Positions 38,793-40,314 of a DNA stretch of 64,000 nt are shown one piece after another. The position numbers and the translations under genes are program-made. Location of the stretch: assembly GCA_977020255.1 (NCBI GenBank), contig CDROCS010001674.1, positions 186,001 to 250,000 of the forward strand. Reading direction: 5' to 3'. Position 1 is the first letter of the stretch. Every line of letters starts with the position of its first letter. Below the pieces are notes generated by a model. It was not told where the DNA came from. It saw only the letters and a program-made list of their open reading frames with translations, and made no database searches. This DNA comes from Obrimoposthia wandeli. Lineage: Eukaryota.

Positions 38793-38827
38793 TTGACTCA
38801 TACTGAGCAATCAGTAGAATGCAGCCC
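38793..38827 (+). promoter_or_regulatory. Sigma70 stable-RNA promoter of the tRNA operon
   Basis: -35 TTGACT, 16-bp spacer, -10 TAGAAT, GC-rich discriminator GCAGCCC. Confidence 0.8.
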
Positions 38828-38909: not shown

Positions 38910-38983
38910 GGCGCGTTGGCAGAGTGGCTATGCAGCGGATTGCAAATCCGTGTACCTCGGTTCGACTCCGGGACGCGCCTCCA
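38910..38983 (+). tRNA. tRNA-Cys (GCA)
   Basis: 74-nt cloverleaf, anticodon GCA, TTCGA T-loop, CCA end. Confidence 0.97.
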
Positions 38984-39003
38984 TTATTCCTTGAGAATAA
39001 TAT

Positions 39004-39079
39004 GCGACACTAGCTCAGCTGGTAGAGCGCAACCTTGCCAAGGTTGAGGTCACGAGTTCGAGCCTCGTGTGTCGCTCCA
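39004..39079 (+). tRNA. tRNA-Gly (GCC)
   Basis: 76-nt cloverleaf, acceptor stem GCGACAC/GTGTCGC, anticodon GCC, CCA. Confidence 0.96.
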
Positions 39080-39185
39080 AATTTTGTACTAACGGTCACG
39101 TTACATTGGCAGATCGTTATTAAGATGGTGTCTAACCGCTTTTTATAAAGCACATTGGTTGGAGCATCGCAATAAAGAATTGCGT

Positions 39186-39272
39186 GCCCTGGTGGTGGAA
39201 TTGGTAGACACAAGGGATTTAAAATCCCTCGGCGTTCGCGCTGTGCCGGTTCAAGTCCGGCCCGGGGCACCA
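39186..39272 (+). tRNA. tRNA-Leu (TAA)
   Basis: 87 nt, long variable arm, anticodon TAA, CCA. Confidence 0.96.
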
Positions 39273-39304
39273 TCTATTAAAGTCTGTATCGAAAGATATA
39301 GCAT

Positions 39305-39380
39305 GCGACACTAGCTCAGCTGGTAGAGCGCAACCTTGCCAAGGTTGAGGTCACGAGTTCGAGCCTCGTGTGTCGCTCCA
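39305..39380 (+). tRNA. tRNA-Gly (GCC), identical second copy
   Basis: Same 76-nt sequence as 39004-39079. Confidence 0.96.
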
Positions 39381-39386
39381 AATACG

Positions 39387-39419
39387 AAGCCCCGACAGGA
39401 ATGTCGGGGCTTTTTATTT
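39387..39419 (+). terminator. Intrinsic terminator of the tRNA operon (repeated in every downstream unit)
   Basis: AGCCCCGAC-aggaat-GTCGGGGCT followed by TTTTATTT. Confidence 0.9.
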
Positions 39420-39439
39420 ATTGGTCCTTTTTACAGCAT

Positions 39440-40086
39440 GCGACACTAACTCAGCTGGTAGAGAACAACCTTGCCAAGGTTGAGGTCACGCCTAAGCCTT
39501 GAAGATCGGGAGCCTCGTGTGTCGCTCCAAATACGAAGCCCCGACAGGAATGTCGGGGCTTTTTATTTATTGGTCCTTTTTACAGCATGCGACACTAACT
39601 CAGCTGGTAGAGAACAACCTTGCCAAGGTTGAGGTCACGCCTAAGCCTTGAAGATCGGGAGCCTCGTGTGTCGCTCCAAATACGAAGCCCCGACAGGAAT
39701 GTCGGGGCTTTTTATTTATTGGTCCTTTTTACAGCATGCGACACTAACTCAGCTGGTAGAGAACAACCTTGCCAAGGTTGAGGTCACGCCTAAGCCTTTG
39801 AGATCGGGAGCCTCGTGTGTCGCTCCAAATACGAAGCCCCGACAGGAATGTCGGGGCTTTTTATTTATTGGTCCTTTTTACAGCATGCGACACTAACTCA
39901 GCTGGTAGAGAACAACCTTGCCAAGGTTGAGGTCACGCCTAAGCCTTGAAGATCGGGAGCCTCGTGTGTCGCTCCAAATACGAAGCCCCGACAGGAATGT
40001 CGGGGCTTTTTATTTATTGGTCCTTTTTACAGCATGCGACACTAACTCAGCTGGTAGAGAACAACCTTACCAAGGTTGAGGTCACG
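39440..40086 (+). repeat. Tandem array of 149-bp pseudo-tRNA-Gly plus terminator units (4 full, 1 partial)
   Basis: Unit starts at 39440, 39589, 39738, 39887 and 40036; AGTTC of the T-arm is replaced by a 19-nt insert; the D-stem carries two substitutions. Confidence 0.92.
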
Positions 40087-40133
40087 CCTAAGCCTTGAAG
40101 ATTCGACCTTGCTTAGAGCCCAGCAAACCCTCG
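40087..40133 (+). mobile_element. Fragment of the MITE family fused to the last pseudo-tRNA
   Basis: 40088-40133 aligns without gaps to 3118-3163; the last 27 nt are 23/27 identical. Confidence 0.6.
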
Positions 40134-40152
40134 TTTACGAATTTGAAGGCGA

Positions 40153-40314
40153 TTATTTCATAAAGCAGCTTTTTGCATACTCAGTTGCTTCATTTGCCGT
40201 CCAGTCACCTTTTGGCTTGTCTTTTATTTCTTTACACCAATCTTCGCTGCCTATTTCCGGTGCGCAAGCAGATAATACAAAAACAGCTGTTATTAGTACT
40301 AGAATTTTTTTCAT
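40153..40314 (-). CDS. Small lipoprotein, DUF3012-like (53 aa; absent from the ORF track)
   Basis: Hand translation MKKILVLITAVFVLSAC-APEIGSEDWCKEIKDKPKGDWTANEATEYAKSCFMK; GAAGGG RBS. Confidence 0.85.
   Translation of the reverse strand: MKKILVLITAVFVLSACAPEIGSEDWCKEIKDKPKGDWTANEATEYAKSCFMK

What the first reader, a model, noticed from the sequence alone, without database searches (positions are those of the whole stretch)
39440..40035. Tandem array of tRNA-Gly mimics with a rebuilt T-arm
Seen: after the normal operon terminator come four 149-bp units, each a full-length copy of tRNA-Gly plus the terminator (the ancestral unit is 135 bp). Every unit keeps the acceptor stem G1-C72, C2-G71, G3-C70, U73, CCA and the GCC anticodon arm. 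AGTTC is replaced by CCTAAGCCTTGAAGATCGG, and the D-stem 10-25 pair is broken. One unit has a variant insert (CCTTTGAG), arguing for real rather than collapsed-read copies. Known: those retained positions are GlyRS identity elements, EF-Tu reads the T-stem, and staphylococcal non-proteinogenic tRNA-Gly species have altered T-loops. Inference: the units could be chargeable but ribosome-excluded RNAs, decoys for anticodon nucleases or tRNA-targeting integrases, or simply amplified dead copies silenced by the terminators.
Basis: partly seen in the sequence, partly recalled or inferred. Interest (0 to 1): 0.78.

Follow-up and report, generated by a model that had tools for sequence, protein, structure and literature searches.

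The report
Amplified pseudo-tRNA-Gly plus terminator array
The repeat is real: a broken copy of a glycine tRNA gene plus its terminator, amplified about five-fold in this bacterium, and the broken copy belongs to an old, apparently undescribed family found in about a quarter of 401 sampled genomes of the family Vibrionaceae (marine bacteria).

Summary
After a Cys-Gly-Leu-Gly tRNA operon lie four 149-bp units and a truncated fifth, each a tRNA-Gly(GCC) copy with 14 extra bases in the T-arm, plus a strong terminator. ARAGORN and Rfam do not score the units as tRNAs.

The window is a Photobacterium-like contig inside a 1.35-Gb assembly. At the same locus, four related genomes carry one or two such copies, so the five-fold array is a lineage-specific expansion by unequal exchange. 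Unit 3 and unit 5 are already decaying, and no promoter was predicted inside the array.

The insert itself is not private. The same T-arm lesion sits in tRNA-Gly-derived copies in 95 of 401 sampled Vibrionaceae genomes: Photobacterium 43/67, Enterovibrio 15/24, Aliivibrio 7/15. It always lies in tRNA-Gly operons, and copy-plus-terminator arrays recur independently.

The tRNA-identical flanks evolve in concert with neighbouring real genes. The 5' half is often degenerate or deleted. The insert motif stays conserved while spacers diverge.

No phage, plasmid, integrase or FemAB link was found, and no robust conserved fold. Best reading: mostly silent amplified pseudo-tRNA units of a conserved family whose function is unknown.

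The parts
38793..38820 (+). Promoter-like site of the tRNA operon (TTGACT, 16 nt, TAGAAT)
   Evidence: Consensus scan, 10 of 12 matches. It is the only good site upstream of the tRNAs, and none lies inside the array.
38910..39380 (+). Functional operon: tRNA-Cys (38910-38983), tRNA-Gly GCC (39004-39079), tRNA-Leu UAA (39186-39272), tRNA-Gly GCC (39305-39380)
   Evidence: ARAGORN and the Rfam tRNA model at 56-66 bits. The same operon occurs in Photobacterium and Aliivibrio loci.
39381..39439 (+). Trailer, intrinsic terminator 'T2' (stem 39386-39413, then a T-run) and spacer. This 59-nt block is repeated after every unit.
   Evidence: Terminator scan: 12 pairs, 7 of them G-C. The block is identical in all units. 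It is the terminator that follows the pseudo-tRNA, not the genuine gene, in relatives G125, G105 and G157.
39440..39529 (+). Unit 1 pseudo-tRNA-Gly (90 nt); insert at 39491-39509; its terminator at 39535-39562
   Evidence: Not called by ARAGORN or Rfam. The predicted fold has no cloverleaf, z = -1.1.
39589..39678 (+). Unit 2 pseudo-tRNA-Gly; insert at 39640-39658; terminator at 39684-39711
   Evidence: Identical to unit 1.
39738..39827 (+). Unit 3 pseudo-tRNA-Gly with the variant insert (39789-39807; G>T at 39799, A>G at 39800); terminator at 39833-39860
   Evidence: The change breaks two pairs of the small hairpin that can be drawn in the insert.
39887..39976 (+). Unit 4 pseudo-tRNA-Gly; insert at 39938-39956; terminator at 39982-40009
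   Evidence: Identical to unit 1.
40036..40102 (+). Unit 5, truncated. The anticodon is mutated to ACC (40069). The unit ends inside the insert at the 9-nt stretch CTTGAAGAT (40094-40102).
   Evidence: In relative G125 the native downstream flank already holds CTTGAAGAT followed by the same bases as window 40103 onward. The right edge is therefore a deletion joint through 9-nt microhomology.
40103..40314 (-). Native downstream flank and a convergent small lipoprotein gene (DUF3012, 40153-40314). These are outside the element and mark the orthologous locus.
   Evidence: Pfam DUF3012, E = 6e-19. The flank is 87-94% identical in four Photobacterium genomes.

Best explanation
The array is a recent, lineage-specific tandem expansion of one unit: a pseudo-tRNA-Gly plus an intrinsic terminator.

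Expansion came from unequal homologous exchange. Copies share the 20-bp tRNA 3' end and the 59-bp trailer and terminator block, which lets misaligned copies recombine.

The pseudo-tRNA is not a new invention of this strain. It descends from an old family of tRNA-Gly(GCC) derivatives found in tRNA-Gly operons of Vibrionaceae. The family mark is a net +14-nt lesion of the T-arm: a variable part, then the conserved CCTYGAAGATCRGG. This lesion destroys the UUCGA T-loop.

The parts that are still tRNA-like are kept identical to neighbouring functional tRNA-Gly genes by gene conversion. In this strain that exchange also gave the units a full tRNA 5' half, where close relatives have a degenerate one.

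The units here are most likely not working tRNAs and are poorly expressed. Each sits behind a strong terminator without a promoter of its own.

Shown: the anatomy, the family, concerted evolution, variable copy number, and the deletion joint at the right edge. Inferred: the exchange mechanism, low expression, and absence of tRNA function.
For: The repeat and its lesions are documented. The units are not recognised as tRNAs and are not predicted to fold as a cloverleaf (z = -1.1 and -0.5).

There are five identical strong terminators and no promoter-like site inside the array.

The orthologous locus, with the same DUF3012 flank, carries one copy in three relatives and two in a fourth. There the copy has a degenerate 5' part and lies between two different terminators. 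The right joint is explained by 9-nt microhomology already present in a relative.

The family is found in 95 of 401 Vibrionaceae genomes, with none in the reversed-pattern control: Photobacterium 43/67, Aliivibrio 7/15, Enterovibrio 15/24. In five genomes the insert motif occurs only in tRNA-Gly-derived copies.

Copy-plus-terminator arrays with other periods recur in other genomes.

T-loop position 59 (G or A) of the copy matches a neighbouring genuine tRNA-Gly in every locus examined; in a few loci the genuine genes carry both states.
Against: The insert motif is far better conserved than neutral sequence should be. In 13 Enterovibrio genomes its first 10 nt are nearly invariant while adjacent spacers are only 42-64% identical. 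The family as a whole may therefore have a function that these units share.

One copy in another contig of this assembly has a compensatory D-stem change (C11-G24 to U11-A24).

Terminators leak, and tRNA operons are transcribed very strongly, so read-through RNA could be appreciable. Metatranscriptome contigs from one sediment sample contain relatives' copies.

Copy number rests on one assembly.
Confidence: 0.6

Rival explanations
1. The family, these units included, makes a functional non-decoding tRNA-Gly-like RNA. It would be cut out by RNase P and 3' processing, perhaps charged by GlyRS through the acceptor stem and U73, and kept off EF-Tu and the ribosome by the wrecked T-arm. It would act as a glycine donor, a decoy or a regulator. 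The array would raise its dose.
For: The insert motif is conserved across three genera and between paralogous loci. Encoded CCA and U73 are kept in about 57 of 70 distinct copies, although they lay outside the search anchor.

In Enterovibrio the copies sit mid-operon without terminators, so they must be co-transcribed. Their 5' strand still pairs with the 3' acceptor strand at 5-7 of 7 positions in all 17, at 6-7 in 15 of them, with one compensatory U2-A71.

ARAGORN accepts copies with an intact D-arm as 90-91-nt tRNA-Gly.
Against: In many members the 5' acceptor strand or D-arm is degenerate or gone. No conserved fold is supported: RNAalifold gives only weak helices, and the window units fold no better than shuffled sequence.

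Anticodon position 34 drifts, to ACC, ATC or GTC. FemAB passes the Pfam cut-off in 1 of 67 Photobacterium genomes.

In this window every unit lies behind a terminator. Most acceptor-stem changes are C-to-U opposite G, which keep pairing by default.
Confidence: 0.2
2. The pseudo-tRNA plus terminator is a cis-acting operon-end module. The tRNA-like 3' half would give processing enzymes an entry site on read-through transcripts. Stacked terminators would insulate the convergent downstream gene. Repeating the module would strengthen the stop.
For: In Photobacterium and Aliivibrio the copy sits after the last tRNA-Gly and its terminator, and before a second terminator. Copy-plus-terminator arrays arose independently several times. 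The gene downstream of the window array is convergent.
Against: In Enterovibrio the copies lie in the middle of operons without terminators. This model gives no reason for the insert to be conserved. No processing data exist.
Confidence: 0.12
3. The units are scars or decoys of site-specific integration. On this reading, partial tRNA-Gly 3' halves with a foreign stretch would be left by, or serve as attachment sites for, tRNA-targeting integrases.
For: In many members only the part from the anticodon arm to CCA is tRNA-like. That is the segment typically duplicated at att sites (general knowledge). The unit is bracketed by 20-bp direct repeats of the tRNA 3' end.
Against: No integrase or island lies between the gene and the copy; the gap is only about 100 nt. 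Insert-bearing sequence was not found in IMG/VR, in phage records or in plasmid records.

Pairs of copies about 46 kb apart turned out to be two separate tRNA operons. The same copy sits at the same operon end in two genera.
Confidence: 0.05
4. The multi-copy array is an assembly artefact of a single unit.
For: Only contigs, not reads, could be laid on it, and no piece spans the array.
Against: The units are not all identical: unit 3 has a variant insert and unit 5 a mutated anticodon plus a unique joint. The repeat unitig has about 3.5 times the flank depth in the likely source run. Comparable arrays exist in independent genomes.
Confidence: 0.03

Closest known systems
tRNA pseudogene plus rho-independent-terminator repeats in Photobacterium phosphoreum tRNA operons (Giroux and Cedergren, J Bacteriol 1988/1989). 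Recalled from memory; the papers could not be retrieved here.
   Same: Same genus. Tandem repeats of a defective tRNA copy with an intrinsic terminator at the end of a tRNA operon, attributed to unequal crossing-over.
   Different: As I recall, those are tRNA-Pro-derived. A conserved T-arm insertion shared across genera was not described, to my knowledge.
Non-proteinogenic tRNA-Gly of Staphylococcus (glycine donors for FemXAB cell-wall synthesis)
   Same: tRNA-Gly variants with altered T-arm features that weaken EF-Tu use while keeping GlyRS identity elements.
   Different: Those are normal-length cloverleaf tRNAs with base substitutions and a dedicated Fem transferase. Here the T-arm is 14 nt longer, the T-loop motif is lost, the 5' half is often degenerate, and FemAB passes the Pfam cut-off in 1 of 67 Photobacterium genomes.
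3' external transcribed spacer of the E. coli glyW-cysT-leuZ operon (3'ETS-leuZ sRNA sponge)
   Same: A non-tRNA product from the 3' end of the homologous Cys/Gly/Leu tRNA operon, ending in the operon terminator.
   Different: That RNA has no tRNA-like part and acts by pairing with RyhB and RybB. No pairing target or Hfq link was tested or found here.
tRNA 3'-half direct repeats at integration sites of phages and genomic islands
   Same: A partial copy of the tRNA from the anticodon arm to CCA lies downstream of the intact gene.
   Different: No integrase, no island and no phage or plasmid counterpart. The copy carries a conserved internal lesion and is syntenic across genera.
Bacterial tRNA-like Y RNAs (YrlA)
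   Same: Non-decoding RNAs with tRNA-like parts.
   Different: YrlA keeps the T and D arms and replaces the anticodon stem, and it is encoded next to rsr. Here the anticodon arm is kept, the T-arm is wrecked, and no rsr lies nearby.

Membership tests
Functional bacterial tRNA | Recognised as a cloverleaf by tRNA finders | tested here: not met
   ARAGORN calls only the four genuine genes. The Rfam tRNA model gives no hit in 39440-40102 even at E<=1. Relatives with an intact D-arm are called as 90-91-nt tRNA-Gly.
Functional bacterial tRNA | 7-nt T-loop with the UUCGA motif closed by a 5-bp T-stem | tested here: not met
   AGTTC is replaced by a 19-mer. The loop motif is lost in all units.
Functional bacterial tRNA | Intact D-stem | tested here: not met
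   G10>A and C25>A give an A-A mismatch, and G26>A is also present.
GlyRS substrate (bacterial tRNA-Gly identity set: G1-C72, C2-G71, G3-C70, U73, C35, C36) | Identity nucleotides present | tested here: met
   Present in units 1-4. Unit 5 lacks the 3' half. Whether they suffice in this fold cannot be tested with these tools.
Staphylococcus-type non-proteinogenic tRNA-Gly system | A Fem-type aminoacyl-tRNA transferase in the genome | tested here: not met
   PF02388 passes the cut-off in 1 of 67 Photobacterium genomes, whereas the insert-bearing copies occur in 43 of 67. The window's own genome was not searched for it.
Integration-site repeat (attL/attR) | An integrase or island between the tRNA gene and the partial repeat, or the sequence present in a mobile element | tested here: not met
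   About 100 nt separate the gene from the copy. Neighbouring genes are housekeeping. No hits in IMG/VR, phages or plasmids.
Tandem duplication by unequal homologous exchange | Head-to-tail units with identical boundaries lying within sequence shared by the parental copies; copy number varying among relatives | tested here: met
   149-bp period at 99% identity. The 20-bp tRNA 3' end and the 59-bp trailer are shared. One or two copies at the orthologous locus.
Vibrionaceae insert-bearing tRNA-Gly derivative family (defined here) | tRNA-Gly(GCC) anticodon arm and 3' end, with CCTYGAAGATCRGG in place of the T-loop, located in a tRNA-Gly operon | tested here: met
   Units 1, 2 and 4 match the consensus exactly. 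The operon context is the same as in Photobacterium and Aliivibrio.

The most novel reading that the evidence does not exclude
The insert-bearing tRNA-Gly derivative is a conserved, functional, non-decoding RNA gene of Vibrionaceae. It would be made from tRNA operons by co-transcription or terminator read-through, cut out like a tRNA, and used off the ribosome, for example as a glycine-charged helper, as a decoy for a tRNA-Gly-targeting enzyme or toxin, or as a regulator. The window's array would then be a dosage amplification of it.
Probability: 0.25. Interest if true: 0.8.

Novelty: new variant of a known kind. Interest (0 to 1): 0.55.

Why it matters
Defective tRNA copies in bacterial tRNA arrays are usually dismissed as short-lived debris. 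Here one specific lesion of the T-arm has persisted in tRNA-Gly operons of at least three genera. It is kept in step with the working genes by gene conversion, yet it holds its own conserved motif.

That leaves two possibilities. Either this is an instructive case of how concerted evolution can preserve a non-functional variant for a very long time, or it is an overlooked tRNA-derived RNA. Both can be tested directly with an insert-specific probe in cultivable Photobacterium, Aliivibrio or Enterovibrio strains.

For annotation, it explains why tRNA finders sometimes report 90-91-nt 'tRNA-Gly' genes, or even 'tRNA-Asp', in these genomes.

Tried and rejected
Mobile-element origin. Two IMG/VR pattern scans gave one chance hit and none. 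BLAST against phage and plasmid records matched only ordinary tRNA-Gly genes. Copies about 46 kb apart in three genomes looked like island att repeats, but they are two separate tRNA operons.

Known RNA family. The Rfam scan gave only sub-threshold hits to rnk_pseudo and ohsC, caused by the terminator hairpin.

Conserved RNA fold.
- RNAalifold on 68 copies gave one weak helix.
- A small hairpin in the insert (CUYGA-AGA-UCRRG) keeps pairing in 66 of 70 copies. That is not significantly more than chance given relatedness.
- A hairpin between the insert's 5' half and the 3' side of the anticodon arm is strong thermodynamically but is broken by the common T-to-C variant.
- A rod-like fold of the Enterovibrio copies has z-scores of -2 to -4 but no covariation.

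Origin of the insert. I saw partial similarity to the reverse complement of the preceding tRNA segment and to the tRNA-Cys T-arm. Neither was convincing.

Literature. Six full-text searches and two look-ups by id found nothing on this element, and the Giroux and Cedergren papers could not be retrieved.

Expression. Only assembled contigs were available, so levels and RNA ends could not be read.

Full report
**What is in the window**

A promoter-like site at 38793-38820 precedes four tRNA genes: tRNA-Cys, tRNA-Gly(GCC), tRNA-Leu(UAA) and tRNA-Gly(GCC), together spanning 38910-39380.

From 39361 to 40102, Tandem Repeats Finder reports a 149-bp period, 5.0 copies and 99% matches. Reading and aligning the units gives four complete units and a truncated fifth. 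The 90-nt pseudo-tRNAs of the complete units lie at 39440-39529, 39589-39678, 39738-39827 and 39887-39976. Each is followed by the same trailer and terminator (12-pair stem) and a short spacer. The fifth unit is 40036-40102.

Against the genuine gene, every unit carries three substitutions: G10>A, C25>A and G26>A. In each, AGTTC of the T-arm is replaced by a 19-mer, a net gain of 14 nt. Unit 3 has two adjacent substitutions in the insert (39799, 39800). Unit 5 has the anticodon changed to ACC (40069) and stops inside the insert.

ARAGORN and the Rfam tRNA model do not recognise any unit. It missed only the fifth fragment.

**Where the window comes from**

The window is contig C1674 of a 1.35-Gb, 6912-contig assembly, so it is a bacterial contig inside a eukaryote-sized assembly.

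**The same locus in relatives**

These four genomes have the same downstream flank: a DUF3012 lipoprotein gene, then pxpABC-like genes. In them the last genuine tRNA-Gly is followed by, in order:
- one terminator (T1);
- a roughly 50-nt spacer;
- one insert-bearing tRNA-Gly derivative, or two in one genome;
- a second terminator (T2), which is the terminator repeated in the window.

In those relatives the derivative's 5' part is degenerate: a weakened acceptor strand, about 17 extra bases and a damaged D-arm. The window's units instead have a full tRNA 5' half, including the AGCAT that precedes the genuine gene. They are therefore a recombinant form made by exchange with the upstream gene.

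The right edge of the array is also explained. In one relative the native flank already reads CTTGAAGAT followed by the bases found at window 40103 onward. The fifth unit was thus joined to the flank by a deletion through 9 nt of microhomology with the insert.

Copy number at this locus is 1, 1, 1, 2, and 4 plus a fragment. A 700-nt metagenome contig that is nearly identical to the window carries one full and one truncated copy.

**The element is not private**

Other contigs of the same assembly hold further copies with related but different inserts. One lies in a Met-Gly array and two in another Cys-Leu operon.

An exact-pattern scan of one genome per bacterial species found the insert-bearing form only in Aliivibrio, Photobacterium and Enterovibrio, plus two metagenome bins: a 700-nt 'Motiliproteus' contig that looks mis-binned and a Saprospiraceae contig that is not tRNA-like.

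I then searched with a 25-mer covering the conserved insert end and the tRNA 3' end, allowing three mismatches. It hit 95 of 401 sampled Vibrionaceae genomes and none with the reversed control. By genus the counts are:
- Photobacterium, 43 of 67;
- Aliivibrio, 7 of 15;
- Enterovibrio, 15 of 24, where most of the misses are small, probably incomplete genomes.

In five genomes a 15-nt insert motif occurs only in tRNA-Gly-derived copies.

Copies always sit in tRNA-Gly-containing operons. In Photobacterium and Aliivibrio they are often at the operon end, between two terminators. In Enterovibrio they lie mid-operon without terminators and have lost the D-arm.

Tandem arrays of copy plus terminator, with other periods, occur in several other genomes: 115 nt x4-5, 157 x4, 143 x3, 124 x3. 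I recall a similar arrangement being described for a Photobacterium phosphoreum tRNA operon in 1988-89, but I could not retrieve those papers.

**How it evolves**

Position 59 of the T-loop is G in some lineages and A in others. In every locus examined the derivative carries a state also present in the neighbouring genuine tRNA-Gly genes; in a few loci the genuine genes carry both. The tRNA-identical parts are therefore homogenised with the working genes, and their conservation says nothing about selection on the derivative.

The insert cannot be maintained that way, because the genuine genes lack it. Its start (CC) and its end (CCTYGAAGATCRGG) are nevertheless conserved across genera and across paralogous loci, while its middle varies.

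Within Enterovibrio the first 10 nt of the insert, which lay outside the search anchor, are nearly invariant in 13 genomes. Adjacent spacers and trailers there are only 42-64% identical.

One caution applies. All spacers of this operon are unusually well conserved between Aliivibrio and Photobacterium, roughly 80-90% by eye. The baseline rate at these loci is therefore low.

**Tests of particular functions**

*tRNA-like fold.* The window units fold no better than shuffled sequence (z = -1.1 and -0.5). The minimum-energy structure keeps the acceptor stem but pairs the insert's 5' half with the 3' side of the anticodon arm, which would bury the anticodon. That hairpin, and a small hairpin within the insert, recur across the family. 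Neither is supported by convincing covariation.

In the 17 Enterovibrio copies the 5' strand still pairs with the 3' acceptor strand at 5-7 of 7 positions (6-7 in 15 of them), with one compensatory change. Most changes, however, are C-to-U opposite G, which preserve pairing by default.

*Cell-wall-type glycine donor.* FemAB passes the Pfam cut-off in 1 of 67 Photobacterium genomes.

*Integration site.* There is no integrase, no island and no phage or plasmid counterpart.

*Expression.* Only assembled contigs could be laid on the window. Two metatranscriptome runs from one sediment sample contain contigs with relatives' copies. In the likely source run the repeat unitig has about 3.5 times the flank depth. 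Neither result shows transcription or a copy number.

**Verdict**

The array is best explained as a recent unequal-exchange amplification of a pseudo-tRNA-plus-terminator unit. It is mostly silent and already decaying (confidence 0.6).

The unit belongs to an old, widespread family of tRNA-Gly derivatives with a conserved T-arm lesion, and I found no description of that family. Whether the family has a function remains open. I put about 0.25 on a functional non-decoding RNA and 0.12 on a cis-acting operon-end module.

Noticed in passing
L007:1200-1930 (G000 contig C5135): A second Cys-Leu operon in the same assembly, in which both glycine positions are occupied by insert-bearing copies (1508-1600 and 1836-1926) and no genuine tRNA-Gly remains. 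The second copy has a compensatory D-stem change (C11-G24 to U11-A24), and ARAGORN calls it a 91-nt tRNA-Gly.
   Followed up: partly
L006:1-1800 (G000 contig C3739): A long Met-Gly cassette array. One copy is insert-bearing (1503-1592, insert starting CCAGTTCC). One tRNA-Gly has a base deleted in the anticodon loop (108-182, ARAGORN 'tRNA-???'). The CCAGTTCC insert type recurs in Met-Gly arrays of other Photobacterium genomes, so the paralogous copies are old.
   Followed up: partly
window 39080-39185: The 106-nt spacer between tRNA-Gly and tRNA-Leu is about 80-85% identical, by eye, between Photobacterium and Aliivibrio. That is unusually conserved for a tRNA spacer and may mark a processing signal or a structured element.
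   Followed up: no
L046 (genome G384), two copies near position 1500: A tRNA-Gly derivative with a different 20-nt insert at exactly the same site. It is an A+T-rich palindrome between the same CC and GG ends, which can form a hairpin.
   Followed up: no
L123:1021-1111 (genome G137): An insert-bearing copy whose anticodon has mutated to GTC. ARAGORN reports it as a 91-nt tRNA-Asp, an annotation trap.
   Followed up: no
window 39381-40074, minus strand: Five sub-threshold Rfam hits to the Pseudomonas rnk leader (34 bits against a gathering score of 55) and to ohsC. Both are caused by the repeated terminator hairpin and are spurious.
   Followed up: yes
between the pseudo-tRNA and the DUF3012 gene in relatives G001, G105 and G157 (L011, L067, L068): About 550 nt encoding a small putative lipoprotein are present in three relatives. 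They are absent from the window and from G125.
   Followed up: no
G000 as a whole: The assembly is 1.35 Gb in 6912 contigs and holds several bacterial contigs with tRNA-Gly arrays (C1674, C3739, C5135, C3649, C506). The window is bacterial, Photobacterium-like, and not part of the host genome.
   Followed up: partly
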